The translations under genes and the position numbers were made by a program. From Octopus sinensis (Eukaryota), in the NCBI RefSeq assembly GCF_006345805.1, contig NC_042998.1, forward strand, positions 185,132,001-185,196,000: a stretch of DNA of 64,000 bases. The letters run 5' to 3'. Position 1 is the stretch's first letter; every line of letters begins with the position of its first letter. Below, piece after piece: positions 1-63,845 of the stretch. The notes below the pieces were generated by a model, which saw only the letters and a program-made list of their open reading frames with translations, was not told the origin of the DNA and searched no databases.

Positions 1-474
1 AAAAGCAAGGTTGACCGCGGCTTAATTTGAACTCGGAACGTAAGGACGGACGAAATACCTATTTCTTTACTACCCATAAGGGGCTAAACACAGAAGAGAC
101 GAACAAGGACAGACAAACGGATTAAGTCGATTATATCGACCTCAGTGCATAACTGGTACTTATTTAATCGACCCCGAAAGGATGAAAGGCAAAGTTGACC
201 TCGGCGGAATTTGAACTCAGAACGTAGCGGCAGACGAAATACCTATTTCTTTACCACCCGTAAGGGGCTAAACACAGAAGGGACGAACAAGGACAGACAA
301 ACGGATTAAGTCGATTATATCGACCTCAGTGCGTAACTGGTACTTATTTAATCGACCCCGAAAGGATAAAAGGCAAAGTCGACCTCGGCGGAATTTGAAC
401 TCAGAACGTAGCGGCAGACGAAATACCACTAAGCATTTTTCCCGACGTGCTAACGATTCTGTCAGCTCGCTACC
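1..474 (-). mobile_element. Tandem array of tRNA-derived SINE units (family C) ending in an older, diverged family B body
   Basis: Repeating ~177-184 bp units. The head has A-box-like GAGCTGACAGAA (~460-472) and B-box-like GAGTTCAAATTCC, followed by the central GCCTTTCATCCTTTCGGGGTCGAT..AAGTACCAG block. Junctions AAAGAAATA|GGTATTTCG lie at ~57 and ~243. Confidence 0.85.
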
Positions 475-6084: not shown

Positions 6085-6930
6085 TGGTTTCAAATTTTGG
6101 CACAAGGCCAGCAAGTTTAAGGTGGGATTAAGTTGATTACATCGACCTCAGTACTCAACCGGTACTTATTTTAATGGTACCAAACTGATGGAAGGCAAAG
6201 TTGACCTCGGTAGAATTTGAACTCAGAACGTAAAGACGGACGAAATATCTATTTCTTTACTGCCCACAAGGGGCTACACACAGAGGGGACAAACAAGGAC
6301 AGACAGACGGATTAAGTCGATTATATCGACCCCCAGTGCGTAACTGGTACTTATTTAATCGAACCCGAAAGGATGAAAGGCAAAGACGACCTCGGCGGAA
6401 TTTGAACTCAGAACGTAGCGGCAGACGAAATACCTATTTCTTTACTACCTACAAGGGGATAAACACAGAGAGAACAAACAAGGACAGACAAACGCAAAGA
6501 CGGACGAAATACCTATTTCTTTACTACCCACAAGGGGCTTTTCACAGAAAGGACAAACAAGGACAGACAAACGGATTAAGTCGATTATATCGACCCCAGT
6601 ACGTAACTGGTACTTATTTAATTGACCCCGAAAGGGATGAAAGGCAAAGTCGACCTCGGCGGAATTTGAACTCAGAACGTAGCGGCAGACGAAATACCTA
6701 TTTCTTTACTACCTACAAGGGGATAAACACAGAGAGAACAAACAAGGACAGACAAACGGATTAAGTCGATTATATCGACCGCAGTACGTAACTGGTACTT
6801 ATTTAATCGACCCCGAAAGGGATGAAAGGCAAAGTCGACCTCGGTGGAATTTGAACTCAGAACGTAAAGACGGACGAAATACCGCTAAGCATTTGGCTCG
6901 GTGTACAAATGATTCTGCCAGCTCACCGCT
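6085..6930 (-). mobile_element. Nested/tandem SINE array (family B head and tail enclosing family C units)
   Basis: Four tail junctions at ~6248, 6433, 6513 and 6697. The B-type tail CTTGCTGGCCTTGTGCCAAAATTTG lies at 6085-6125. Confidence 0.85.
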
Positions 6931-7557
6931 TTGTAGTACTTTTGCTAATAAGTACTAAGAAGTTGTTTTAATTTTAGTGATATTGTAGTATATTGTTATT
7001 GTTAGTTTGTGTTTAGGTGTTAAGCATTTTTCGTTTGTTTATGAGATTTTCATAATGCATTCATGTATCCTATAATTTCTATCCATGATTCCAATTGTTT
7101 TATTGACCATAAGGCGAATTCTAACAGTTGTAATCGTGGATATTAATTGTAGAATAGTTAAGAAAAACGGAACAAAACAAAAATATTCAAATGTCTAATA
7201 TTTGAAAGGCCATGCTGCTGATTTCAATATAATGTGGAAGATACTTGAGACATGCAGATTGCACACAAATGAGAAAAATCGTAGCAGGTTATGAATAATT
7301 GAAAATAGATTCAAACTAATAGGCCCTATTAAATCTGCTAACCATTATTATAATACAGCTTATGTTAGTATATCTATATATGAAACCGAAACACTTTCCG
7401 TCCTTCTTCGCGCCGCCTTAACCACCAATTAGATAACTCATATTTTACGCCATATATCACAGCAAGCACTTCCTTAGAACATTTCGACTGAATTAGCAGT
7501 TTCATAGAGTCCAACACTCTGAGTAAGGTTTGTTCATTATTTCATTCAATCATGCAG

Positions 7558-14073: not shown

Positions 14074-14515
14074 AGGTTGTGTGGTTAAGAAGCTCGCTTT
14101 TCAACCATGTGATTCCGGGTTCAATCCCACAGCGCGGCAATTTTGGGAAGTGTCTTCTATTATATCCCCGATCAGACCAATTCCTCGTAAGTGTATATGA
14201 TGGATGGAATCTGTGTGAAATCCCATCTTATACACGTGTCTTTGTATTTGTGTTTCTTCCCATACACCTATTTCTTTACTACCCACAAGAGGCCAAACAC
14301 AGAGGGGACACAAACAAGGAAAGACAAACGGATTAAGTCGATTACATCGACCCCAGTGCGTAACTGGTACTTAATTTATTGACTCCGAAAGGATGAAAGG
14401 CAAAGTCGACCTCTGCGGAATTTGAACTCAGAACGTAACGGCAGACCAAAACGGCTACGCATTCCGCCCGGCGTGCTAACGTTTCTGCCAGCTCACCGCC
14501 TTCTTCCCACACACC
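14074..14515. mobile_element. Family A SINE head (+) followed by a full family C SINE (-, 14269-14501) with a 14-bp TSD
   Basis: TSD TCTTCCCATACACC (14255-14268) / TCTTCCCACACACC (14502-14515). Confidence 0.85.
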
Positions 14516-25879: not shown

Positions 25880-26912
25880 GCTAGAATGGAACTGATATAT
25901 CAATTCAATCTATACTCTTACAAATGCTACACCTTTAAAAAGAAATGGACTTGTTTGATTGGCCCTTTAGAAAAAACGGTCAATCTTCGAGCGATAAACA
26001 AAAAGGTCAAAAATATATGTATATATATATAAAAAACTTATAAAAATTATAAAATCCGAGGAAAAAACCTATTGACGTTAATGAAGACAGTGCAAATTAA
26101 TGCATAGAAATTAAACCTGTTATAAATACTGCAATACATATTTATATTAAAATCTACATATATATATCAACATACACAAAAGGATGCGCGTAAACGCCAT
26201 ACATACATATACAGACGTATGAATATAAATCTAAATATACACATAAAAGCATGTGTACATATATTCACGCAAACCGTCTCGCACGCAAGCTAAAATTCAT
26301 CTATGTAGCAATTCTCATATACTGAGCAAGGAGGGGGAACGAAAGAAAGGGAGAGAGAGAAAAAGGAACGAAGGAGGGGTGGGGAAAAAACGAAATAAGA
26401 AAAAAAATATGTATACAAGCAGTGTAACGGTGTTATTGGCATCTATAGTGACCAGTATACATACACAAGTTTGAATGGATACATATACATACCGTCGTGT
26501 ATATGTGTGCTTAAGCACAAACATACTTTCACTTACACATACACAGATACGCATGCTTACAAATACATATGCTTTGCTATACACATACTTATATAAACAT
26601 TCTAATTTTGACAACATTGCTTTTTTTAAAAAAAACATTGCTTTTAAAAAATGGGTGCATTAATAAAAATATATACGAAAGACATATAAAATAAAATATA
26701 ACATCCTATTTTGGGTCATTTATAAATAATCAAGGTAATATAAATAATCAAGGTAATCCTATGCAATACAATAACATGAAAACAAAGTTTGTAGGTTTTT
26801 CCTAATATATATGTAGAAACATAAGACTTTGCTATACGGATTAAGATCCGCAAGGCTTGGAAACAAAAACAAAATCAAAATCCATCGTAGCGCTCAAGAG
26901 TCAAAATCAAAA

Positions 26913-27617
26913 TCAAAAATCAAAAATACAAAATATATACTCTATCCATATGGTATATTTATTCGACAATTTAAATTTAGCCGCGTGCCTACATAAGTTC
27001 ATTAGCTCACTTCTTTGATTCAAAGAATTATTGTCTTTGAATAAGATGTACATTTTTTCTAATAGACAAAGTCTGCACTTGAAATTATTTTTGTAAGCTC
27101 CATGCCTGTATGGTGCCGCCCTGTCCAGAATGCTCCATGTCACGTTGAAAGGTGGGGCTTCCTTTTCTTTTAGTTCCCAGACATATTTTGCTAGGCTGGT
27201 TTTCTTCCTATTCTCTGGGTATTTAAATGAATTTTTATGAGAATAAAATCTTGTTTTAAATGAATTTTCTGAAGCCCCTGTGTATGTCTTGTATTCCGAT
27301 GAGCCTTCCACTTGCACCTTGGCTCTATAAACTACTCCTTTCACTAGACATTTCCCTTCTAACGGACAGGAGCTTTCGTTTTTGCAATTACATTTCTTAA
27401 TGGGCTCGGCACCATGTCTAATCTCAATTAGCTTCCTATTATGTTGGCTAATGTAAGAGGCGAAATTTCTGCAACAAGAATAGCTAACCTTCAGGGTTCT
27501 TCTATTAAATATTCTGTAGAATTTATGACCCTGCTTAAAATGCTTAGAGACTAATCTCAAAAATTCCTTACCTATATTAGTCTTTACGGCCAAATTGAAA
27601 GCCGGGTTGAACCACAA
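26913..27617 (-). pseudogene. PLE linker plus GIY-YIG endonuclease (left arm)
   Basis: WFNPAF..CNCKNESSCPLEGKCL..VVYRAKV..YTGASENSFKTRFYSH..CRLCLLEK. Confidence 0.9.
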
Positions 27618-27925
27618 AACTTTCGTGGTCCTAGTTCTTCGTACAGCATTAAGCTGGTTGAACTGGATCTTCTCAGAGAATCCACTATTCTTTAATGCGC
27701 TATCGTAATAAGGTGCAGCATTATGGAATGCTGCATCGTCCGAAGAAATTGAAGATATTCTTCTACCTACATCGCTGACTAAGTTCCTAAGGATAACTTG
27801 GTGATGGTTCGAATCTTTGCTAATATACGTAAGCCCATCGAATCTTTGCTAACCCGTAAGCCCATCCTTTGAAAGAAAGCTATAAGGTCCTTCCTAAGTC
27901 TATCTGATTCATGGCCGTTTAGATT

Positions 27926-28981
27926 ATGCGTGGCTATAAGGACCTTATAGCTTTCTTTCAAAGGATGGGCTTACGGGTTACGATAGATGCTAACCTGAAT
28001 AGTGTAGATTTTTTAGACGTAAATTTTAATGTAAGATCGGATAGATTTAAACCTTTCCGTAAGCCCAATGAAAAGCTATCGTATATTAGCAAAGATTCGA
28101 ACCATCCACCAGTTATCCTTAGGAACTTAGTCAGCAATGTAGGTAGAAGAATATCTTCAATTTCTTCGGACGAGGCAGCATTCCATAATGCTGCACCTTA
28201 TTACGATAGCGCATTAAAGAATAGTGGATTCTCTGAGAAGATCCAGTTCAACCAGCTTAATGCTGATAATAATGCTGCACGAAGAACTAGGACCAGGAAA
28301 GTTTTGTGGTTCAACCCGGCTTTCAATTTGGCCGTAAAGACTAATATAGGTACGGAATTTTTGAGATTAGTCTCTAAGCATTTTAAGCAGGGTCATAAAT
28401 TCTACAGAATATTTAATAGAAGAACCCTGAAGGTTAGCTATTCTTGTTGCAGAAATTTCGCCTCTTACATTAGCCAACATAATAGGAAGCTAATTGAGAT
28501 TAGACATGGTGCCGAGCCCATTAAGAAATGTAATTACAAAAACGAAAGCTCCTGTCCGTTAGAAGGGAAATGTCTAGTGAAAGGAGTAGTTTATAGAGCC
28601 AAGGTGCAAGTGGAAGGCTCATCGGAATACAAGACATACACAGGGGCTTCAGAAAATTCATTTAAAACAAGATTTTATTCTCATAAAAATTCATTTAAAT
28701 ACCCAGAGAATAGGAAGAAAACCAGCCTAGCAAAATATGTCTGGGAACTAAAAGAAAAGGAAGCCCCACCTTTCAACGTGACATGGAGCATTCTGGACAG
28801 GGCGGCACCATACAGGCATGGAGCTTACAAAAATAATTTCAAGTGCAGACTTTGTCTATTAGAAAAAATGTACATCTTATTCAAAGACAATAATTCTTTG
28901 AATCAAAGAAGTGAGCTAATGAACTTATGTAGGCACGCGGCTAAATTTAAAATGTCGAATATAAATATACCATATGGATAG
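27926..28981 (+). pseudogene. 5'-truncated PLE ORF: RT C-terminus plus GIY-YIG endonuclease (Naiad-like), 351 aa uninterrupted
   Basis: VDFLDVNFN..FKPFRKPNE..YISKDSNHPPVI (PLE RT thumb); VVY..YTG..F..R..H GIY-YIG; flanking Cys clusters. The RT catalytic DD motif is missing. Confidence 0.92.
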
Positions 28982-30086
28982 AGTATATATTTTGTATTTT
29001 TGATTTTTGATTTTGATTTTGACTCTTGAGCGCTACGATGGATTTTGATTTTGTTTTTGTTTCCAAGCTATGCGGATCTTAATCCGTATAGCAAAGTCTT
29101 ATGTTTCTACATATATATTAGGAAAAACCTACAAACTTTGTTTTCATGTTATTGTATTGCATAGGATTACCTTGATTATTTATATTACCTTGATTATTTA
29201 TAAATGACCCAAAATAGGATGTTATATTTTATTTTATATGTCTTTCGTATATATTTTTATTAATGCACCCATTTTTTAAAAGCAATGTTTTTTTAAAAAA
29301 GCAATGTTGTCAAAATTAGAATGTTTATATAAGTATGTGTATAGCAAAGCATATGTATTTGTAAGCATGCGTATCTGTGTATGTGTAAGTGAAAGTATGT
29401 TTGTGCTTAAGCACACATATACACGACGGTATGTGGTCTCTATAGATGCCAATAACACCGTTACACTGCTTGTATACATAATTTTTTTCTTATTTCGTTT
29501 TTTCCCCACCCCTCCTTCGTTCCTTTTTCTTTCTCTCCCTTTCTTTCGTTCCCCCTCCTTGCTCAGTATATGAGAATTGCTACATAGATGAATTTTAGCT
29601 TGCGTGCGGGACGGTTTGCGTGAATATATGTACACATGCTTTTATGTGTATATTTAGATTTATATTCATACGTCTGTATATGTATGTATGGCGTTTACGC
29701 GCATCCTTTTGTGTATGTTGATATATATATGTAGATTTTAATATAAATATGTATTGCAGTATTTATAACAGATTTAATTTCTATGCATTAATTTGCACTG
29801 TCTTCATTACGTCAATAGGTTTTTTCCTCGGATTTTATAATTTTTATAAGTTTTTTATATATATATACATATATTTTTGACCTTTTTGTTTATCGCTCGA
29901 AGATTGACCGTTTTTTCTAAAGGGCCAATCAAACAAGTCCATTTCTTTTTAAAGGTGTAGCGTTTGTAAGAGTATAGATTGAATTGATATATCAGTTCCA
30001 TTCTAGCAAAAACTGTCTGATGAACGGCAACGAGAAACTCAGAGTAACAGATTTTGTTGAATTTTCTGCTGCTTAAAATAAAGTAT
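27935..30086 (+). mobile_element. Penelope-like retroelement, right arm
   Basis: ORF, ~1 kb 3' region and hammerhead; ends in (TA)n. Confidence 0.92.
30008..30055 (+). ncRNA. Hammerhead ribozyme (type I, minimal/dimeric) in the PLE right arm
   Basis: CTGT(30013-16)-CTGATGA-A-CG[GCAA]CG-A-GAAA-CTC-A-GAG-TA^ACAG; predicted cleavage after 30046. Confidence 0.8.
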
Positions 30087-33124: not shown

Positions 33125-33770
33125 TGCAAAAACTATTCACAATGCTATCCGCAAGAAGGACTGCTCTAGCGGATACATCAAACACATGTCAGAAGCAGCA
33201 TATATATTCAGACTTTTCAAAACCAGAAACAGTGGTGGAATACTCCAATAAATACAGCAATTCGGTGCGCGTACAACAGACCTGATATTGTTCTGTGGGA
33301 CAGGATACAAAGGTTATGTACTGTTGTAGAGGTCAGCTGCCCAGTGGATGAGAATCTACAATTCCGCCGAGGTCGACTTTGCCTTTCATCCTTTCGGGGT
33401 CGATTAAATAAGTACCAGTTACGCACTGGGGTCGATATAATCGACTTAATCCGTTTGTCTATCCTTGTTTGTCCTCTCTGTGTTTAGCCCCTTGTGGGTA
33501 GTAAAGAAATAGGATGAGAATCTACCATCAAAAGTCCATGAAAAACAGAACATTGATGGTGAACTAATGCTGAACTTCCCGCTCTTGTACCCTGACTACA
33601 AATTTTTTGTTATTATGGCACCAATTAGGCTATGTGTCTCACAAAAACTTAAAAATTTGAAGTTTTTCGCAGAAAGAACAAAATAAACTGAAGCCCATTC
33701 TCCAAATCTATTGTTTAGTAGCATAGAGAAGATTTGTAAGACACCCGAAGATTTACTATGAGATTCTTTA
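33125..33770 (+). pseudogene. Restriction-like-endonuclease LINE relic, split by a family C SINE (33360-33511)
   Basis: WWNTPINTAIRCAYNRPDIVLWDRIQRLCTVVEVSCPVDENL; the SINE has the TSD GGATGAGAATCTAC (33346-33359, 33512-33525). Confidence 0.75.
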
Positions 33771-34430: not shown

Positions 34431-34660
34431 TATTTCTTTACTGCCCACAAGGGGCTAAACATAGAGTGGACAAAGAAGGACAGACAAACGGATTAGGTCG
34501 ATTACATCGACCCCAGTGCGAAACTGGTACTTTATTTTATCGACCCCGAAAGGATGAAAGGCAAAGTCGACCTCGGCGGAATTTGAACTCAGAACGTAAC
34601 GACAGACGAAATACTGCTAAGCATTTCGCCCGGCGCGCTAACGGCTCTGCCAGCTCGTCG
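34431..34660 (-). mobile_element. Family C SINE inserted in a GACA/GATA tract
   Basis: Full head, body and tail. Confidence 0.88.
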
Positions 34661-35534: not shown

Positions 35535-36245
35535 CTCCTCCTCCTTCTCCTCCAGCTTCCACATCCTCTATGTTCCCCTGGGTCAAGTGCGAGTGGACTG
35601 AGAGCGGAAGAGTGGTACTAGCGAAAGCAGTGGTACTAGCTAGCAGGTCATACATGCGAATCACGGCTAACCTTAGTATTTACAAACATAGCTACATAGT
35701 TAAGGAATTCATCTCATAAGTGCATGGTTTTGGGTTCGATCTAACAGCACAATACCTTGTATTGTTTCCTTCTAGCATAGCCTCGGATTTATCAAAACCT
35801 TGTGAGTGAAATTTAATAATCGAAAACTGTAGGAAATCCATCGCAGAGGCTGTTTCTGTCCTCAGAGGACACCCGTCATTTTGAATAATGCCATCATCTG
35901 TCCTTGCTTGTCCTCTCTATGTTTAGCCCCTTGTGGGTAGTAAAAAAAATAGGTATTTCGTCTGCGGTTACGTTGTGAGTTCAAATTCCGCCGAGGTCGA
36001 CTTTGCCTTTCGTCCTTTCGGGGTCGATTAAATATGTACCAGTTACGCACTGGGGTCAATATAATCGACTTAATTCGTGCCTCTGTCCTTGTTTGTCCTC
36101 TCTGTTTTTAGCCCCTTGTGGGTAGTAAAGAAATAGAAATAAAGTGTCTTACTCAAGAACGCAACGCGTCACCGGGGATTGAACTCTCGATCGGGAGCCG
36201 AATACCCTAACCGCTGCCCTAACCACTGGGCCATTGCGCCTCCAC
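35290..36245. mobile_element. Cluster of SINE fragments (families D and A, plus a C dimer at ~35900-36132)
   Basis: Recognisable heads and tails; junction AAATA|GGTATTTCG at ~35952. Confidence 0.7.
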
Positions 36246-36778: not shown

Positions 36779-37697
36779 CAGGGTGCGATGGGTAAATTGT
36801 TGCCATTTTATAGTTTTAATTTCGCGCATGCGCATTGTTTGTTTTTGATTTTGTCGACTGCACGGTATAGTAGGGTCAGTTGCACACCGTCGGTGAGAAA
36901 AACAGCACCATGACGCAATTCACTCAGCCAGAAATTTGGAAACAACATGCTGTGCTGCTTGGCATTCGCACCGGAAGTTCCAATACGAACATTTCAGAGT
37001 GTTTGGGTGTCAATCTGAGAACAGTGCAGAGGATTCGAAAAGAATTGGGTGAGTCTAATGTTGATTACGAAGGTACAGCAGCGAGGAAAACTCACTCTGA
37101 TCGTTCTAATAAGAAAAGAACTCCTGAATTTGTTGGTGAGATCCAGGCCATGATTGACAACAACCCCTCCAAGTCAATCAGGTCTATCGCCGTGGAAATG
37201 GGAGTGTCTGAGTTTCTTATCAAGCAGGTAGTGCATGAAGATATTCAGTATTCTTCAAACAAGATGAGAAAGGGCCAATTTTTATCCCAAGCCATCAAGG
37301 ACGAGAGAAAAGACCGCACTACAAAGCTTTTGAACCAACTCAAGCATCTCTTCCAACCGAACATGCTTTGGTGTTTCTCAGATGAGAAAAATTTCTGCCA
37401 GGATCAGATGGTGAACACACAGAACCACCGTTGGCTGAGGGGTCACCAAAACATGCACCGGGAGGGATAAAACACAAACATCCAGGCAACATCATGGTGT
37501 TTGGAGTGAACACTAGTTATAGAGGCATTTTGCCTAAATTCACCAATTTAAACAAGGAGACCACCCAGAAGAGTTGCAAGAGATTCCGAAGTCGTCTGGA
37601 GGCCGTGGTTGAAGTCGATGGTGATTTTATTGAATAAATTTACTCTTTAGTATTTCAAGATATGTTAAAATGAGATTTCAGTGTTATTTTCATTTTT
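36779..37697 (+). mobile_element. DD37D (maT) transposon copy retaining the N-terminus and lacking the catalytic core
   Basis: TA|CAGGGTGCGATGGGTAAATTG TIR. ORF 36880-37470 has HTH-like segments and WCFSDEKNF. The C-terminus RFRSRLEAVVEVDGDFIE is present. Confidence 0.85.
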
Positions 37698-44830: not shown

Positions 44831-45639
44831 AAAGTCTGAAATAGTTATATCAGACATACCAATGCGTGAGGTCGACTAACGTCAACAGTACGAAACCTTC
44901 AGGTATGAGGAAATAATAGCTTTACACCGCACCTGTCTAACACAGGTGTGTATTGAACACTTCACGATTTTGCACGGAAACAAACAAAAAAAAACATACG
45001 TGTGCTTCTATGCATGTGCTTGTGTGTATGTGTGTATGTGTGTATGTGTCAGTGTTTTGTCTGCTTTTCTGAAAAGTCTCTTTAACAATATATTCTGTAC
45101 ATTTAACCTGTATCACAGACTTCACACACTACACACCCCAGTTCGCTTCCTCCTCCTCCTTTTACTCCATCCCCCGCCTCCATTTCATCGCCATCATCAT
45201 GACGCCATCTTTATAATTATGAGAATTATTAAGACTATTATTGTACTGTTGATTTCTTTTGTGGTAGTTGTTAAACTTTCAAAACTGTTTTATCAACCAT
45301 GCTGTTAGTGCCCTGATTATTATTAAGTCAGTCCATAGATTAGCGATTGTAGCCATTAACTATAAAGCTATTGTCCGGTTTGAAATTAAATTTGCCCAAA
45401 ATAGGTTTTTCCTATAACTGAACAGATCGCCATATCAACTTTATTATCACCGATATAATTCTTCGCCTTTCCCTCTGCAATTTAATTATACAGCCACATT
45501 AATAAAAATGAGCAGCTCGATATAAAACTATTCTTCACTGCTTCGCTTTCGAATCGATCTCCTTGTCAAGAGATAAAATTAAGAACATAGTAGCATTCAT
45601 TTGGCCAGGTGTTCAAGGCAGTATGTTTTACGAGAGGAA

Positions 45640-46456
45640 AGGCGAAGAGCTGGCAGAATCGTTAGCACACCGGGCCAAATTCTTACCGGTATTTCGTCTG
45701 TCTTGACGTTCTGAGTTCAAATTCCGCCGAGGTCGACTTCGCCTTTCATCCTTTCGGGGTCGATAAATTAAGTACCAGTTACGCACTGGAGTCGTTGTAA
45801 TCGACTTAATCCGTTTATCTGTCCTTGTGTGTCCCCTCTATGTTCAGCCCCTTGTGGGCAATAAAGAAATAAGAAACGTTAGCACGCCGGGCGAAATGGG
45901 TAGCTGTATTTCGTCTGTCTTGACGTTCTGAGTTCAAATTCCGCCGAGGTCGACTTTGCCTTTCATCCTTTCGGGGTCGATAAATTAAGTACCAGTAACG
46001 CACTGAGGTCGATGTAATCGACTTAATCCGTTTGTCTATCCTTGTTTGTCCCCTCTGTGTTTAGACCCTTGTGGGTAGTAAAGAAGTAGGTATTTCGTCT
46101 GCCACTACGTTCTGAGTTCAAATTCCGCCGAGGTCGACTTTACCTTTCATCCTTTCGGAGTCGATTGCATAAGTACCAGTTACGCACTGGGGTCGATATA
46201 ATCGACTTAATCCGTCTGTCTGTCCTTGTTTGTCCGCTCTGTGTTTAGTCCTTTGTGGGTAGTAAAGAAATAGGTATTTCGTCTGCCGCTACGTTCTGAG
46301 TTCAAATTCCGCCGAGGTCGACTTTGCCCTTCATCCTTTCGGGGACGATAAATTAAGTACCATTTACGCACTGGGGTCGATGTAATCGACTTAATACCTA
46401 CGTCTGTCCTTGTTTGTCCCCTCTGTGTTTAGCCCCTCGTGGGCAGTAAAAAAACA
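45640..46456 (+). mobile_element. Four-unit family C SINE array within one 17-bp TSD
   Basis: TSD ATGTTTTACGAGAGGAA at 45623-45639 and 46457-46473. Confidence 0.9.
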
Positions 46457-47585
46457 ATGTTTTACGAGAGGAATAAATGTGAAGTGATGCTCTCTTTTTT
46501 TTTTATTGACGGTAGTAACTAGAAGTGAAACAGATTCAGCCGGAAATCGAAACCGTAACACCAAGTTCAGCACGCCAGCTCTTACTTAGTTGCAAAGTGT
46601 AGAGTTTTGTGGAACATAGAAAATGGGAGGTTATAACATGGGATGTTGCGGATTTACCAGTGTATATTAAGTAAAATAGTAAAACTTAACTTTTACATCT
46701 TGGGTGAAAACTCTGAACATGTTTCTGACTTTTTAAAACCTTCTCGGCAAAGCCTATATCACTGCCGGCAGCCGAAACGTTAGGTATAGGATTTTGTGAG
46801 AAAATATTTCTTTGTGAGTAAATTGTTTCACACAAGCACGCATGCACACACACACACACACACATGCTGCTCAGTGCTATTATCCAAACTATTATACGTA
46901 TCAGAGACAGGGATGTCATATAGCAAACAGGTAAAATAACTGCATGTATTTGTGTTAAAGTATTCAAACACAAATCTTGAATATCAGACAGAGAAACGAA
47001 GTCGGGAACAAACTCATCCTTGGGAAATCCTTGTATAGAGAGATTTACTTCTAGCTAAAAGTTGCCAAGAATTAGGCCCATTATAATTTAATAAAGTACC
47101 AAAAGTGAGCTAGAGTAATCTAATAGCATCAATTTAGACAATTCGAGTAGGTGGTGATGTAGTGATTGATGTGCGCAAAAAATCCTAGATGCATTGAAAT
47201 TTACCATTGAGTAGGGGGAAATAAACAAAAACCTCCTGGAATTTGTTAGAGATCCACAAAGAAAAAGGAAGATAATTTCAAGAAATTAAGAAAGAATTTT
47301 ACAAGAAATTGAATTTTCATAATTAGAGAGGAAATTCTCATGTTCGTTAGCAAACAACATGACGACTACGGGGATGTTTCGATTTTATTAAGCCTCATCA
47401 GCGATCATGGTTATTTTTTTTGTTTTTTTTCACGTCTGTTTCGATCAATAAACAGAGATTTTTGCAAAGAGAAAATATCTAGGAAGTTTATTTTGACTAA
47501 TATAATTTGCAAAATTACCAGAAGTTATCTGAGGGGAAATTACCATGAATTTAAATCATTCAGTTAAGTAGCAATTACCGAATAA

Positions 47586-47840: not shown

Positions 47841-48036
47841 TATGTTTCTTTATTAGCCACACAGTGCTGCACAAAGACGGGACAAATTACAATGTAGAGC
47901 TTTTCTTTTGGGGATAAAAAAAGGGGGTTTGGTTTTGATCAAAAGGGATCGTAAAAAGAAAGAAAGGGGAAAGCAAAAAAAAGGGAGGGGAATAAAATAA
48001 AAGGAAAAAGAAAAAAATCGATCAATAGGGATCGTT

Positions 48037-55177: not shown

Positions 55178-56624
55178 CACAAAGATATTCTTCGTACATT
55201 CTTTAAACATAGTCAGATTTTTCAAAGATGCTTTTTGCAGTAAAGAACAAACCTTCAAAAGACAACAAATATTTTTTTTATATAAAAGATATAAAAATAA
55301 AAGGAAGAAAAAAAAACAAAACACCCGTGAGAAAATTGTTCGATTCAATGTATTTGGCAAATCATAAATTTAAATAGAATAAAATAGAATGAAACAGAAG
55401 AAGAAGAAAAAAACAGAAAGAAATTTAATGAAATTTAACAGATATAAAACATTCAGCGTGCGTATGTGCATTCAGAGAGCTATGAATCACGGTAGTGAAA
55501 GGATAAGGCTTTTGCACATTGCTTACCCATTGTGCATCACCACAGTTGGTTTGGCAACGATTCCAATGGTTGCAGTTCAAGTAATATATCGACGCTACTG
55601 CTGACCTGGCTTGTCAATCATCGGATCAATAGATGAGAAAAGCAGAGAATAGCACAGTTTTTCCTGTAGCCAGAGCGATTTCCTATCAGAAGCAAGCCGC
55701 CAGAACCGGATATAAACGATGGCCTTTTCAGAGACCTCCTATAGAAAATGGTCTACTAAATATTGTGTCCCGTTTTCTATGGAAGCAAAACCAAAGCAAT
55801 ATCGAAACGACTGCAATGTTCGCCGATCATTCTATACACACAGTAGCACTCGCATGAACAGACTAAATGAAAATAAAGCGAGCTACAAATAATACACACT
55901 ACAGATCTATATAACGTTAGAAAAGTTGAAGCGGTGGTGTATAAAAAAAAAAGTGTTTACCAATTCAAGAGTGGGAGGCGAGAGAGAGAGAGAGAAAGAG
56001 GGAGATACAGAAAGAGGGAGAGAAAGGGAAGTTGTTGGATGATAGTGGAGTAGAGAAAGGAAATCAGAAGAGAATTGAAGAGGAGGAGTGGGAAGAGAAA
56101 AAAGAAAGCGAATGAAATATTTTCATTCACACGCGAATAGCTTTTATTCAGATATCTTTATTTCGCATAGGTGAAAATAATGATGATAATAATGATGATG
56201 ATCCTCATTCATCTCTCTCTTTATCCTCATCATCATAATCATCATCATCATCACCAATATCAACATCACTATCACAATCAACAGTGTTATTATTATCGTT
56301 ACCTAGTTGGAGGTGTTATTATCATTTTTACTTGAAGTGTTTGGTTACTCTACGCTTTGAGTTCAAATCTTTCCAAAGTGTATATATACTTCGTAGGAAA
56401 GTTTGTAGACTACATTTTTACCTCCAAGTTATATGACCTTTTTCCTCAGTTGCAAATCATTATTATCAGACAGTAAAAGTAATTACTTTAATCATTTACC
56501 TTTTCTCTACTAATTAAATAACTTCTCATTAATTCTGAATAAACAATGGTCTTAACAATAGTATTCAGGTACAAAATTTGTATATAACTTGGCAATAGTT
56601 GCACCAATATTTTGTGGGTGTACT

Positions 56625-57095
56625 AAGGCGGCAATCTGACAAAAACTTTAACTTGCCAGGTAAATTGCTTAGCGGCATTTCGTCTGTCCTTACCTTCTAA
56701 GTTCAAATTCTGCCGAGGTCGACTTTGCCTTTCATACCATGGGAGTCGATTAAATAAGTACCAGTTGATCACTTATATAGATATAATCGACTTATCTCTT
56801 CCCTCGAAATTGATATCCTTATGCCAGAAAGCGGTTAGCTAGCAGAAACGTTAGCACGCAGGGCGAAATGCGTAGACGTATTTCGTCTGCCGTTACGTTC
56901 CGAGTCCAAATTCCGCCGAGGTCGACTTTGCCTCTCATCCTTTCGGGGTCGATAAATAAAGTACCAGTTACGCACTGGGGTCGATGTAATCGACTTAATC
57001 CGTTTGTCTGTCCTTGTTTGTCCCCTCTGTGTTTAGCCCCTTGTGGGTAGTAAAGAAGTAGAAATTGATATCCTTGTGCCAAAATTTGAAGCCAA
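56625..57095 (+). mobile_element. Family B SINE with a family C SINE (56827-57060) inserted in its tail
   Basis: ~21-bp TSD GAAATTGATATCCTT(A/G)TGCCA at 56806-56826 and 57061-57081. Confidence 0.88.
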
Positions 57096-57831
57096 TATTT
57101 TGTGTATGTACAGGTTATGCTCAGCAATTTAATTTGTGTGACATATACTTACAGGGCAAGTGTTTGAAGCTGATATGTTAATCCTAATTGAGAGTTACAA
57201 AGGGCCATTATTACAATTAGAATTATTTAGACTTTCATTAACAACCCACTATTCCAATATTTTTAGCCATATGTTTAATTTACATCGTCATTATTATCAT
57301 CGACACCACCAAACATGAATATCATATAAAATGTGATATTCAAATTCGGTGGTACAAATAAATTTTACATAAAAAGATTTTATTTGCCCGGTCGTTAAGA
57401 ATGATGAGAGGTTTGTTGTTTCAGTAAAGAGAAACTGAGGAGGGAATATGGTATGAACTCTTGAAGGGGCACTGACTTGGTACATCGAACCATTACGTGG
57501 CGTATGCGCAAATTTAAAACTCGTATTTGTGCCTCCACTATCGCATTCATATTCCGTTGCATGTACCAGACTACTGCCGTTGCTCTTCTTCCGACACCAT
57601 GCTTCCACGCTATTGCTCATCCCCTTACATAACTACACTGGATAATCTCGACCGATACGGTATGTTACACGCAGCATAGTAAGTACGCCATTTTCTAAAC
57701 GCGTTCACGACATTACCACTGCGTTGATGTTCAATTGCAGGGAATTATTGATTAGCCGGTTGGACCACATCTTTGGACCCCAATGTCCAAAAGGGCATGA
57801 AATCACTGACAAAAATAAATATTTCAATCTT

Positions 57832-58272
57832 GGATCTTTTCGGTTTGAACGGCAGTTTTTTCTAGCGGTGTCATATGAAATTGTCACCCATAAGTATGAC
57901 CTTAGTATCGATCTATTGCATTTCAATCTATTTTAGGGTTAGGGTTATAGTTAGGGTTGGTTAGGGTTAGGGGTGGGGGGAAGGGTATCTTTTTTTCTTC
58001 AGAAATGTAAATAAACCCAATCTGTTTCTTAAACGAGGGACATATTCTTACGGCACAGAATGTTTTCACCTCAATAGACGTCATTGATTGGTTGAAATTG
58101 CAGAAATTGAAGAAAAAAACAACAACAAATATCTTACAAACTATAGAATTTTCTCAATAAAGCCAAGAGAAAAAGATGTTTTATTAACACATTCTACCAG
58201 TATACGAAGTTTAAAAGTGTTTAGTTACGTGGAAATTATTTTAAAAAACTGCCGTTCAAACCGAAAACATCC
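57832..58272. mobile_element. MITE with GGATC TIRs, copy 3
   Basis: 8-bp TSD TCAATCTT; internal (TTAGGG)n-like tract. Confidence 0.9.
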
Positions 58273-59482: not shown

Positions 59483-59518
<36 letters not shown>

Positions 59519-59614
59519 CATAATAGAAAATGGGACAAGAACGTAAAACATCCGGACAGTTAGGTGATACAAAAATGAGACAACAAAACATCAATGACCC
59601 GTCCTTGTTTTCTT

Positions 59615-60395
59615 TGTAAAGGCAAAGTCGACCTCGGCGGAATTTGAACTCAGAGGGTAAAGACAGATGAAATACCTATTTCTTTACTACCCACAAGGGA
59701 GACAAACACAGAGGAGACAAACAAGGACAGACAGACGGATTAAGCCGATTATATCGACCCCAGTGTGTAACTGGTACTTAATTTATCGACCCCGAAAGGA
59801 TGAAAGGCAAAATCGACCTTGGCGGAATTTGAACTCAGAACGTAACGGCAGACGAAATACCGGTAAGAATTTGGCCCGGCGTGCTAACGTTTCTGCCAGC
59901 TCGCCACCTTATGGCAGACGAAATACCTATTTCTTTACTACCCACAAGGGGCTAAGCACAGAGAGGACAAAAAAGGACAGACAAACGGATTAAGCCGATT
60001 ATATCGACACCAGTGCGTAACTGGTACTTAATTTATCGACCCCGAAAGGATGAAAGGCAAAGTCGACCTCGGCGGAATATGAACTCAGAACGTAACGGCA
60101 GACGAAATACCTATTTCTTTACTACCCACAAGGGACTAAACACAGAGAGGACAAAAAAGGACAGACAAACGGATTAAGTCGATTATATCGACCCCAGTTC
60201 GTAACTGGTACTTAATTTATCGACCCCGAAACGATGAAAGGCAAAGTCGACCTCGGCGGAATTTTAACTCTGAACGTAACGGCAGACGAAATAAGGCAAC
60301 GTATTTCGCCCGGCGTGCTAATGTTTCTGCCAGACGGACGAAATACCACCAAGCAATTTCCTCGGCGTGCTAACGATTCGGCCAGCTCGCTGCCT
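59615..60395 (-). mobile_element. Family B SINE with three nested family C units
   Basis: B head at 60332-60395, B body at 59615-59676; orphan 15-16-nt target duplicates. Confidence 0.88.
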
Positions 60396-60889
60396 TTGTA
60401 GGGTGCATAATATAAGAAAATAATTCAATATCGCGTTCAGTAAACTGAAGGTGGAAATACAGTAAAACGTTTTTCTTTTTGTTTTGTTTTTTTTTTCTTT
60501 TAAGGACAAATAAACTATAAAGAAACAAGCTTTGCAAATCCACTCTGGATAAATCTGGCGAATTTGATGACGTGTTTCATTTGAAGAAATGGAAAATGAT
60601 TGGCTGTTGACCTTTGTCACTGCTAATAACATTTGCGGTGGGTGTGGGTTGACGCTTGTCGCTAGTTAACAAGATTAATTCTAATCCTCCATTATATGCA
60701 AAAAGACGACCAGCGGTGAGCCATAGAACGTTTCGCTGATCTCTTTCTAATAATCTTCGATCTTAACGCCTCTTCAACTATCACTTTCAATTACCACAAT
60801 CACGACCGCTGTCACCATTACCGTCGGCGAATTCATATTCTCACCAAAGTACGCATTTATCTCATTCTCTCATTTCTCTCCTTCTCTCC

Positions 60890-62794: not shown

Positions 62795-62941
62795 TCACCT
62801 TAACACACACACACACACACACACACATACACACGCACACACACACACGCACGCAAAAACTGCACGCACGCACACACACACATATACACACACACTTGCA
62901 AAATTGCACACATGCATACGCACTCTTGATACATTCTCCAT

Positions 62942-62990
<49 letters not shown>

Positions 62991-63419
62991 ATAAAATTGC
63001 ACGCACACACACAGACACATACTTGCAAAATTGTGCACATGCATACACTAGCTTGACACATTCTACTTTTCACGCATACACACACACACACATATACACA
63101 CATACTTGCAAAATTGTACACATCCATACGCACTCTTGATACATTCTCCAGAACACGCATACACACATATACACACACGCAAAATTGCACGCAAGCAAAC
63201 ACACGCAAAACTGCACGCACACACACAGACACATACTTGCAAAATTGTGCACATGCATATCCACGCTTGACACATTCTCCTTTTCACGCATACACACACA
63301 TATACACTCACACATATACACACACACTTGCAAAATTGCACACATGCATACGCACTCTTGATACATTCTCTATAACATGTATACACACACACACACACAC
63401 ACACACATACGCAAAATTG

Positions 63420-63456
<37 letters not shown>

Positions 63457-63845
63457 ATACTTGCAAAATTGTGCACATGCATATCCGCGTTTGACACAGT
63501 CTCCTTAACACGCATACACATACACACATTTACACATATACACACACACTTTCAAAATTGCACACATGCATACACACTCTTGATACATTCTCCATAACAC
63601 GCATACACACATACACACACACGCACAAAATTGCACGCACACACACACACACTCTCTTGCAAGATTGCTCAGATGCACACCCGCGCTTAACACATTCTCC
63701 TCATCATGCATACACACACACATACACATACTCACACATATACGCACACGCTTGCAAAATTGCACACATACATACGCACTCTTGATACATTCTCCATAAC
63801 ACGCATACATACATACACACACACACACAAAACTGCACGCACACG

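What the first reader, a model, noticed from the sequence alone, without database searches (positions are those of the whole stretch)
59615..60395. Candidate self-targeting SINE: insertion hotspot inside its own tRNA-derived head
Seen: 12 of the 20 family C tails I counted are followed by GGTATTTCGTC (at ~57, 243, 6248, 6433, 6513, 6697, 35952, 46089, 46273, 59675, 59927, 60111). That sequence is the 3' arm of the head hairpin CGAAATGC-TTAGC-GGTATTTCG. Here an old B copy is split, with GGTATTTCGTCCGTCT (60332-60347) and GGTATTTCATCTGTCT (59661-59676) flanking the C units. A second orphan GGTATTTCGTCTGCC (59913-59927) sits directly 5' of a complete head. These orphan 15-16-mers match the 14-21-bp TSD size of ordinary insertions. 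Inference: the partner endonuclease preferentially cuts a site carried by the SINE itself (and its relatives), building Pol III-driven arrays in a self-made safe harbour. Caveat: some junctions are copies made by local duplication.
Basis: partly seen in the sequence, partly recalled or inferred. Interest (0 to 1): 0.8.

Follow-up and report, generated by a model that had tools for sequence, protein, structure and literature searches.

The report
SINE insertion hotspot inside its own head
An abundant short retrotransposon (SINE) in what looks like an octopus genome carries, in a hairpin near its 5' end, a site where new copies of the same family land, which, together with local duplication, builds head-to-tail arrays; this is a variant of the self-insertion hotspot already known for human Alu.

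Summary
Of 20 family-C tails (…GTAAAGAAATA), 12 are followed directly by GGTATTTCGTC (two with one mismatch). This motif is nt 52-62 of the element and the 3' arm of a 12-bp hairpin in the head.

At 59618-60397 (minus strand) an older copy is split exactly at nt 51|52. A 16-nt duplication flanks the split, 14/16 identical, and both differences are CpG transitions. A 15-nt orphan of the same site precedes a full-length unit.

The self-targeting reading is partly supported:
- Every array junction keeps the complete RNA 3' end. This points to reverse transcription, not random duplication.
- Three clean insertions outside SINEs share the head site's context, AGY|.
- The first heads of all four arrays whose 5' end is present are of an older type than the heads of invaders and singletons.

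At most 9 of the 12 junctions are independent, and strictly provable independent events number only 2-3. Arrays 1 and 2 grew by local duplication. Array 45k contains a tail|nt-19 junction, and array 35k lacks a resident head. Both fit RT template jumping or re-copied multimers better.

Headless units lack the A box, so "Pol III-driven arrays" and "safe harbour" are unsupported. tRNA models do not recognise the head. A genome-wide tally was not possible because no octopus genome could be reached.

The parts
60332..60397 (-). 5' part (nt 1-67) of an older resident SINE copy (O5). It ends in the 5' copy of the target-site duplication, GGTATTTCGTCCGTCT (60332-60347).
   Evidence: The head is of the old type (GAATCG) and differs from the C consensus at 10/49 positions.
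60112..60331 (-). Family-C unit C1, 5'-truncated (nt 14-236). It is joined non-homologously to nt 67 of the resident copy.
   Evidence: nhmmer model positions 12-233. Its own nt 52 site is degenerate (CTTATTTCG).
59928..60111 (-). Headless family-C unit u2 (nt 52-236). It starts with GGTATTTCGTCTGCC directly after the tail of C1.
59913..59927 (-). Orphan 15-nt copy of the target site, GGTATTTCGTCTGCC. It lies between the tail of u2 and a 2-nt filler (AT, 59911-59912) that precedes a full-length head.
59677..59910 (-). Full-length family-C unit C3 (nt 1-236), with a young-type head (GAAACG).
59618..59676 (-). 3' remainder (nt 52-110) of the resident copy (O3). It starts with the 3' copy of the duplication, GGTATTTCATCTGTCT (59661-59676), and is cut off after ...GCCTTT.
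   Evidence: It matches the 5' copy at 14/16 positions, and both differences are CpG transitions.
1..474 (-). Array 1: old-type head plus unit, a headless unit, then a B-like remainder that runs off the window. Units 1 and 2 are local duplicates of each other.
   Evidence: The two units differ at 6 positions and share 5 private characters.
6125..6932 (-). Array 2: old-type head with a B-type site, C units, and a B-type remainder that continues into a B-type tail (to about 6080). It contains a 264-bp local duplication (6227-6758).
35897..36135 (+). Array 35k: a tail-module fragment (about nt 176-236) followed by a headless unit. There is no resident head and no clear target-site duplication.
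45623..46472 (+). Array 45k: four units (nt 3-236, 19-236, 52-236, 52-234). The whole array is flanked by a 16-17-nt duplication, ATGTTTTACGAGAGGA(A). The units come from different subfamilies.
   Evidence: Units differ pairwise at 15-24 positions.
14269..14502 (-). Singleton family-C copy. Its target was AGC|GGTGTGTGGGAAG, duplicated at 12/13 identity.
33360..33511 (+). 5'-truncated singleton (nt 84-236). Its target was AGT|GGATGAGAATCTAC, duplicated at 14/14 identity.
56828..57060 (+). Full-length singleton inserted into the tail of a B-type copy (56624-56794), with a duplication of about 21 nt, GAAATTGATATCCTTRTGCCA.

Best explanation
Family C is a roughly 236-bp SINE. It has a head with box-A/B-like motifs, a widely conserved central domain and a roughly 60-nt tail ending ...GTAAAGAAATA. 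The head carries a preferred target for the endonuclease of its (unidentified) partner LINE, in the context TTAGC|GGTATTTCG, which lies exactly at the loop / 3'-arm boundary of a head hairpin. Shown: the bottom strand was nicked at nt 51|52 of a resident copy, reverse transcription started from the complete RNA 3' end, and a second nick about 15-16 nt downstream (up to about 21 if array 2 is read the same way) duplicated the site. Inferred: the 5' end of the new copy is then joined in one of two ways. It can be joined non-homologously, which leaves an orphan site plus a truncated or full new head, as for C1 and C3 here. More often, the duplicated site on the resident top strand anneals to its complement in the new cDNA. 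That join discards the invader's head and produces a precise 184-bp headless unit (nt 52-236) behind an intact resident head. Shown: arrays then also grow by ordinary local duplication.
For: (1) Clean hallmarks of target-primed insertion at 59618-60397: a resident copy split at 51|52; a 16-nt duplication at 14/16 identity with both differences CpG transitions; a non-homologous 67|14 junction; and a 15-nt orphan plus AT filler before a full head. (2) Every array junction keeps the tail to its last base, the same end as in singletons followed by target-site duplications. A random duplication breakpoint would not do this. In bivalve SINE arrays attributed to recombination the tails are truncated. 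(3) Of 5 insertions outside SINE heads with readable duplications, 3 have AGY at -3..-1 (P about 1e-4), and 2 have AGY|GG as in the head (P about 1e-5). The motif was defined after seeing the data. (4) The first heads of all four arrays whose 5' end is present are of the older GAATCG type. All 7 heads of invaders and singletons are not (Fisher P = 0.003). (5) Three of five arrays end in an older or B-like remainder that starts with the site. In array 2 that remainder has a private branch of about 11.8%, against 5-7% for the adjacent C units. (6) The units of array 45k come from different subfamilies and differ at 15-24 positions, so they are not local duplicates. (7) All four head-bearing singletons have lost GG at nt 52-53 and are uninvaded. 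(8) Two independent hits at the same base and orientation of a 236-bp element have P about 0.002.
Against: The sample is one 64-kb window, and no other octopus sequence could be reached. The homology-assisted join is inferred, not shown. Site copies inside arrays are C-type at nt 63-66 even where the resident copy is B-type, so an added assumption of mismatch trimming or repair is needed. Array 45k has a tail|nt-19 junction with no site copy, and one duplication flanks the whole array. Array 35k has no resident head upstream. A subfamily marker (GCCGCTACG) is enriched in headless units, 4/6 against 1/10, P = 0.036, which hints at array-borne source genes. The window holds 130 AGYGG sites, so the short motif alone cannot explain the preference for heads. 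There is no 5'-to-3' age gradient, though the test has no power. The orphan before C3 could also come from a nick inside the preceding tail.
Confidence: 0.45

Rival explanations
1. RT template jumping. SINE RNAs whose 5' end lies at nt 52 (cut in the hairpin loop, or a strong RT stop there) are copied to that end. The LINE reverse transcriptase then jumps end-to-end onto the 3' end of another SINE RNA. One integration event therefore lays down [full unit][52-236]n.
For: Array 45k is four units from different subfamilies inside a single 16-17-nt duplication, and it includes a blunt tail|nt-19 junction that insertion into a resident site cannot make. Array 35k is [tail fragment][52-236] flanked by non-SINE DNA. 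All junctions keep the complete 3' end, and the full unit is always the 5'-most one, as this model predicts.
Against: It cannot explain the resident copy split at 51|52 with a 16-nt duplication and a 67|14 junction, nor the 15-nt orphan before C3. It does not predict that first heads are of the older type (P = 0.003), nor the B-like remainders at the 3' ends of arrays. An RT pause at a 12-bp hairpin would be expected at the 3' base of the stem (about nt 63), not at the loop boundary. None of the 5-6 solitary copies starts at nt 52.
Confidence: 0.2
2. Multimeric or composite master. The tail|52 junction arose once or a few times. Arrays are then retro-copies of multi-unit Pol III read-through transcripts, some mobilised through a B-type tail, and are further changed by 5' truncation and unequal exchange.
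For: The subfamily marker GCCGCTACG, with GATTAAAT and GATATAAT, is almost confined to array units. Arrays 1 and 2 have the same layout: old head, two C units, B-like remainder. There is no T4 terminator inside arrays 2 and 45k, so read-through is possible. Array 35k looks like a 5'-truncated dimer copy.
Against: The 59k locus shows insertion at 51|52 with its own duplication and non-homologous junctions, independent of any master. Units within arrays 1 and 2 are closer to each other than to the unit at the same position in the other array. Units u3 and u4 of array 45k belong to different subfamilies. Between arrays 1 and 2, the heads and B-like remainders look more diverged (about 18% over the 59-nt remainder) than the C units (6.5-9%), though this is not significant.
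Confidence: 0.2
3. Purely local tandem duplication, by unequal crossing-over or replication slippage, of a 184-bp segment with no role for retrotransposition in making the junction. This is the origin proposed for SINE-derived tandem arrays in bivalves and squamates.
For: Local duplication is demonstrated here. A 264-bp duplication lies at 6227-6758 (94% identity), with a microhomology junction TCCGTCTTT/TCCGTTTGT. Units 1 and 2 of array 1 differ at only 6 positions and share 5 private characters. Units of array 2 and its B-like remainder share the private GTACT.
Against: It does not explain why the same junction (last base of the tail | nt 52) recurs in five separate arrays. Nor does it explain why the junction coincides with the natural RNA 3' end, why the units of array 45k come from different subfamilies, or the duplications and orphan at 59k. 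No homology between the tail and nt 45-52 would yield this junction; GAAAT-mediated exchange would retain the loop.
Confidence: 0.08

Closest known systems
Alu self-insertion hotspot (Levy, Schwartz & Ast 2010, PMC2836564)
   Same: A SINE carries one prominent position where copies of its own family insert in sense orientation. The position is explained by a match to the partner LINE endonuclease site and by the spacing of the two nicks. About 19,000 Alu-in-Alu events were reported.
   Different: The Alu hotspot lies at the A-rich linker and works through poly(A)/poly(T) priming, with little or no duplication. Here the site is a non-A-rich hairpin boundary in the head (AGC|GGTATTTCG) with 15-16-nt duplications, and the usual product is a precise headless tandem unit rather than a nested full element.
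Tandem-like SINE arrays in bivalves, TSD1-(SINE)n-TSD1 (PMC11481361), and SINE-derived satellites in squamates (PMC10702118)
   Same: Head-to-tail arrays in which the first unit has a complete head and later units lack part of it. A whole array can be flanked by one duplication, as array 45k is here.
   Different: In the bivalve arrays the first and middle units also have truncated tails, as expected from an internal duplication. The proposed cause there is unequal homologous recombination. Here every unit keeps the complete tail, and at least one locus shows insertion hallmarks at the junction site.
Sequence-specific non-LTR retrotransposons and their SINEs (R2 in rDNA, Dong/R4 and Tx1 clades, snRNA/tRNA-gene-targeting lineages). 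Named from general knowledge, not tested here.
   Same: The endonuclease recognises a defined sequence, so insertions pile up at one nucleotide. Dong-R4 and L1-Tx1 are among the recently active LINE clades reported for Octopus vulgaris.
   Different: Family C also inserts at many unrelated sites (5 of 5 solitary copies), so specificity is a preference (AGY|R...), not strict. The partner LINE and its endonuclease type are unknown, and none lies in the window.
SINE superfamilies with a highly conserved central domain (Deu/Nin type; PMC4824008)
   Same: Modular build of head, conserved central domain and exchangeable LINE-derived tail. Families B and C share the head and core up to about nt 172 and differ in the tail. 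Nt 87-136 recur in more than 120 metagenome contigs.
   Different: Assignment of this core to the Deu/Nin domain rests on memory of the published consensus, not on an alignment made here.

Membership tests
SINE (non-autonomous non-LTR retrotransposon) | Short, many dispersed copies, defined 3' end, variable 5' truncation, flanking target-site duplications | tested here: met
   About 20 copies or units in 64 kb. The common 3' end is GTAAAGAAATA. 5' ends lie at nt 1, 10, 13, 14, 19 and 84. Duplications of 13-21 nt are seen at 14269-14502, 33360-33511, 45639-46454 and 56828-57060.
tRNA-derived SINE | Head recognisable as a tRNA (cloverleaf or tRNA model) | tested here: not met
   ARAGORN found 0 genes in the window. 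No Rfam family matched 59500-60500 at E<=10. The predicted fold of the head is one long hairpin inside a stem, not a cloverleaf.
tRNA-derived SINE | Internal type-2 Pol III promoter (A and B boxes at the right spacing) | tested here: inconclusive
   Box-B-like GAGTTCAAATTCC (nt about 75-87) and box-A-like TGGCAGAAACG (nt about 13-23) were read by eye. No promoter model was run and there are no transcription data.
Stringent LINE-SINE pair | SINE tail homologous to the 3' end of a partner LINE | not testable with these tools
   The window has no LINE ORF and no non-SINE copy of the tail. A 45-nt tail-like fragment at 47844-47887 is unassigned.
SINE self-insertion hotspot (as for Alu) | Independent insertions of the same family at one nucleotide of the resident copy, same orientation, with insertion hallmarks | tested here: met
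   One clean event has a 16-nt duplication and a non-homologous 5' junction, and a second has a 15-nt orphan plus filler, both at 59618-60397. Three further arrays sit at the same base in older hosts. The number of truly independent events is 2-3 as a minimum and at most 9.
SINE self-insertion hotspot (as for Alu) | Hotspot explained by the endonuclease target motif also used outside the SINE | tested here: inconclusive
   AGY| is present in 3/5 outside targets and AGY|GG in 2/5 (P about 1e-4 and 1e-5, motif defined post hoc). The window holds 130 AGYGG sites, so the motif alone is insufficient.
Recombination-born SINE tandem array (bivalve TSD1-(SINE)n-TSD1 type) | Repeat junction at an internal point of the tail, so that first and middle units have truncated tails; units highly similar | tested here: not met
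   All junctions keep the full tail. The units of arrays 45k and 59k are about as diverged as unrelated copies. Local duplication exists only as a secondary process.
Deu/Nin-domain SINE superfamily | Central domain homologous to the published Deu/Nin consensus and shared across phyla | tested here: inconclusive
   Nt 87-136 match more than 120 JGI metagenome contigs of unknown hosts. The published consensus was not available for alignment. tRNA-Deu SINEs are annotated in O. vulgaris.

The most novel reading that the evidence does not exclude
The head hairpin acts as a landing pad for the partner LINE. Because the target is homologous to the incoming cDNA, integration is completed by annealing. 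Each hit then adds one exact 184-bp headless unit and leaves the promoter-bearing head intact. This would be a retrotransposition-driven, self-reinforcing route from dispersed SINE to tandem repeat, and a mechanism for the SINE tandem arrays seen in molluscs and elsewhere.
Probability: 0.3. Interest if true: 0.6.

Novelty: new variant of a known kind. Interest (0 to 1): 0.45.

Why it matters
SINE-derived tandem arrays are reported in bivalves, potato and squamates and are usually attributed to unequal recombination, without a demonstrated origin for the first junction. A SINE that carries its partner endonuclease's preferred site inside its own head would supply that missing first step, if target-cDNA homology turns each hit into an exact repeat unit. 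It would also show that self-insertion hotspots, so far documented at scale only for Alu, occur in invertebrate SINEs at a non-A-rich, structured site. SINEs make up about 8-12% of octopus genomes, so this would also bear on repeat annotation, on the use of SINE insertions as phylogenetic characters (recurrent hits at one site break the no-homoplasy assumption), and on identifying the partner LINE's target specificity.

Tried and rejected
(1) Outside sequence.
- The tail pattern was scanned against metagenome contigs and genome contigs and gave 0 hits.
- A second scan with the core 20-mer found more than 120 metagenome contigs, but they share only nt 87-136. The 2 bacterial-genome hits from the same 20-mer were not examined. 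None of this helps with the head site.
- A window ORF (27926-28981) and an antisense SINE reading frame were used as handles to reach octopus contigs. The ORF has only homologs at 44% identity or less and no exact record. The SINE frame found one 543-bp contig holding a related monomer.
- A genome-wide tally was therefore impossible.

(2) tRNA identity of the head. ARAGORN and Rfam were both negative.

(3) Partner LINE in the window. No RT or endonuclease ORF was found.

(4) Age gradient along arrays, and head-versus-body divergence of first units as a test for chimeric origin. There was no signal and no power.

(5) Simple unequal crossover as the source of u2 at 59k. It would duplicate the orphan plus head, which is not seen.

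(6) Exchange between the GAAATA of the tail and the GAAAT of the 5' hairpin arm. It would retain the loop, which is not seen.

(7) Priming by annealing of the RNA 3' end at the site. The nicked bottom strand ends ...GAAATACC, which is not complementary to ...GAAAUA.

(8) The orphan at 6495-6513 as an insertion footprint. It was rejected because the fragment after it is identical, with its private characters, to the 3' part of unit 1. It is part of a 264-bp duplication.

(9) A duplication flanking the whole of array 2. None was found.

Full report
**What is there**

The window is AT-rich, microsatellite-rich eukaryotic DNA. No prokaryote-type tRNA genes were found. The consensus from ten copies has three parts:
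- a head with box-A/B-like motifs (nt 1-95);
- a central domain (nt about 87-172);
- a roughly 60-nt tail ending ...GGGTAGTAAAGAAATA.

An older family, B, shares the head and core up to about nt 172 but has a different tail...CCTTGTGCCAAAATTTGAAACCAATA. I take the host to be an octopus. This rests on my memory of octopus SINEs and on published SINE-rich octopus genomes; no tool here could confirm the species. Nt 87-136 of the element recur in more than 120 metagenome contigs of unknown hosts. The core is therefore one of the highly conserved SINE central domains, probably the Deu/Nin type (PMC4824008), although I made no alignment to check this.

**Checking the observation**

- GGTATTTCGTC is nt 52-62 of the element. 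It occurs 21 times with up to 1 mismatch, against 0.78 expected.
- There are 20 family-C tails.
- In the consensus head the motif is the 3' arm of a 12-bp hairpin, GGGCGAAAUGCU-UAGC-GGUAUUUCGUCU (-14.1 kcal/mol, z = -4.1). A subfamily variant folds no better than shuffles, so the hairpin is not maintained by compensatory change.
- The head is not recognised as a tRNA by ARAGORN or by any Rfam model.

**Anatomy of the flagged locus (minus strand)**

| Coordinates | Content |
|---|---|
| 60397-60332 | nt 1-67 of an older resident copy, ending GGTATTTCGTCCGTCT |
| 60331-60112 | unit C1, nt 14-236 |
| 60111-59928 | unit u2, nt 52-236 |
| 59927-59913 | orphan GGTATTTCGTCTGCC |
| 59912-59911 | filler AT |
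| 59910-59677 | unit C3, full length |
| 59676-59618 | resident remainder, nt 52-110, starting GGTATTTCATCTGTCT |

The two resident site copies match at 14/16 positions, and both differences are CpG transitions. The base before the 5' copy (T) differs from the last tail base (A), so the first nick was exactly at 51|52. The 67|14 junction is non-homologous. These are textbook hallmarks of target-primed reverse transcription (TPRT).

The orphan before C3 fits a second event at a site copy. Because that copy was already preceded by a tail, the nick could equally have been inside the tail, so this event is less clean.

**The other arrays**

Five arrays exist: 1-474, 6125-6932, 35897-36135, 45639-46454 and the 59k locus. 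All have the layout [head-bearing unit][nt 52-236]n with a 184-bp period. Simple nesting of full elements would leave as many orphan half-heads as headless units, and this is not seen.

Every junction keeps the tail to its last base, the same end that precedes the target-site duplications of solitary copies. That end is the natural RNA 3' end. The junction was therefore made by reverse transcription, not by a random duplication breakpoint. In bivalve arrays attributed to recombination the tails are truncated.

**How many junctions are independent**

- Array 2 contains a 264-bp local duplication. Its supposed orphan and 60-nt fragment are identical, private characters included, to the end of unit 1.
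- Units 1 and 2 of array 1 differ at 6 positions and share 5 private characters.
- These reduce 12 junctions to at most 9.
- The units of array 45k differ at 15-24 positions and carry different subfamily markers, so they are not local copies.
- The 59k units differ at 11, 12 and 17 positions.

**Evidence for a preferred endonuclease site**

Five insertions outside SINE heads have readable duplications. Their targets were:
- AGC|GGTGTGTGGGAAG
- AGT|GGATGAGAATCTAC
- AGT|ATGTTTTACGAGAGGA
- CTC|GAAATTG...
- TCG|ATCTAT...

The head site is TTAGC|GGTATTTCG, with AGT|GG in array 1 and GGT|GG in the 59k resident copy. AGY at -3..-1 in 3 of 5 has P about 1e-4, and AGY|GG in 2 of 5 has P about 1e-5. The motif was defined after seeing the data.

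The window holds 130 AGYGG sites, so heads are hit far more often per site than the short motif predicts. Possible added causes are a longer recognition sequence, DNA structure at the hairpin, easier completion through homology, or better survival of insertions inside repeats.

**Resident versus invader**

- The first heads of the four arrays whose 5' end is present carry the B-like GAATCG. The seven heads of invaders (C1, C3, 45k unit 2) and solitary copies do not (P = 0.003).
- Three arrays end in an older or B-like remainder that begins with the site.
- In array 2 that remainder has a private branch of about 11.8%, against 5-7% for the neighbouring C units.
- All four head-bearing solitary copies have lost GG at nt 52-53 and are uninvaded.

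This fits old residents invaded by younger copies.

**Mechanism proposed**

Shown: a nick at 51|52, priming on the full RNA 3' end, and a second nick about 15-16 nt downstream (up to about 21 if array 2 is read the same way).

Inferred: when the resident top-strand end (nt 52-66) anneals to its complement in the new cDNA, second-strand synthesis starts there. The invader's head is lost, and the product is [resident head + new body][site + resident body], which is an exact headless unit. Site copies in arrays are C-type at nt 63-66 even in B-type hosts. This needs trimming of the mismatched primer end or mismatch repair, which is a further assumption.

**What does not fit**

- Array 45k is flanked as a whole by one 16-17-nt duplication and contains a blunt tail|nt-19 junction.
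- Array 35k is [tail fragment][52-236] without a resident head.

Both are better explained by RT template jumping or by 5'-truncated copies of multi-unit transcripts. Arrays 2 and 45k have no T4 run inside, so Pol III read-through is possible. A marker (GCCGCTACG) is enriched in headless units (P = 0.036), which hints at array-borne sources. These rivals cannot explain the 59k hallmarks, but they may account for part of the junction count.

Headless units lack the box-A region. Units C1 and u2 at 59k carry T6 runs. The arrays are therefore not sets of Pol III units; at most one promoter reads through. "Safe harbour" was not tested.

**Comparison with what is known**

A single prominent self-insertion hotspot is documented for Alu, with about 19,000 events. 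It is explained by suboptimal L1 endonuclease sites spaced 15-16 nt apart around the A-linker (PMC2836564). SINE tandem arrays are known in bivalves and squamates and are attributed to unequal recombination.

The present case combines the two. It is a hotspot at a non-A-rich hairpin boundary in the head, and its usual product is an exact tandem unit. I rate it a new variant of a known kind.

**Limits**

All of this rests on 64 kb. Attempts to reach more copies failed. The decisive genome-wide tests are listed under next steps.

Noticed in passing
window 45861-45880: In array 45k the tail of unit 1 is joined bluntly to nt 19 of unit 2 (…AAAGAAATA|AGAAACGTTAGC), with no copy of the target site. 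This looks like an RT template jump or end joining, not an insertion at the head site.
   Followed up: partly
window 6227-6758: A 264-bp local duplication lies inside array 2. Its junction is at the microhomology TCCGTCTTT / TCCGTTTGT and mimics an orphan target site followed by a truncated insertion.
   Followed up: yes
loci L002-L121 (JGI metagenome contigs): Nt 87-136 of the SINE (…GAGGTCGACTTTGCCTTTCATCCTTTCGGGGTCGATAAATTAAGTACCAG) match more than 120 metagenome contigs from unknown hosts. This is a deeply conserved SINE central domain, probably the Deu/Nin type.
   Followed up: partly
L001 172-400 (ENA metagenome contig, 543 bp): A related full-length monomer with a shorter head loop (GGGCGAAATA-GTG-GTGTTTCGCC) and the tail …GGGTAATAACGAAATA. 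A different SINE-like sequence lies upstream. It is presumably host DNA of another cephalopod.
   Followed up: partly
window 26721-29202: Inverted repeats TATAAATAATCAAGGTAA (26721-26757 and 29166-29202) flank a 351-aa ORF (27926-28981). Its only homologs, at 44% identity or less, are unnamed proteins from metagenome assemblies, many carrying PF26215. It is a likely DNA transposon.
   Followed up: partly
window 36880-37470: A 196-aa ORF with an HTH_23 homeodomain-like domain (E = 8.5e-6). It is probably a remnant of a Tc1/mariner-type transposase.
   Followed up: no
window 57933-57972: An interstitial run of about 7 TTAGGG telomere-type repeats.
   Followed up: no
window 47844-47887 (minus strand): A 45-nt fragment resembling the family-C tail (…GGCTAATAAAGAAACATA) abuts a (TCTA)n microsatellite. 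The solitary copy at 34431-34657 also sits in a (TCTG/TCTA)n tract. The fragment could be a stub of a related SINE or of the partner LINE 3' end.
   Followed up: no
window 62800-63650: A satellite-like array with a roughly 222-bp period (sub-periods 83-133 bp), built of (AC)n blocks and a repeated CTTGCAAAATTGCACACATGCATAC motif.
   Followed up: no
window 56624-57100: A family-C copy is inserted into the tail of a B-type copy with an unusually long duplication of about 21 nt. This is a nested insertion that does not use the head site, even though that B head still reads AGC|GGCATTTCG.
   Followed up: partly
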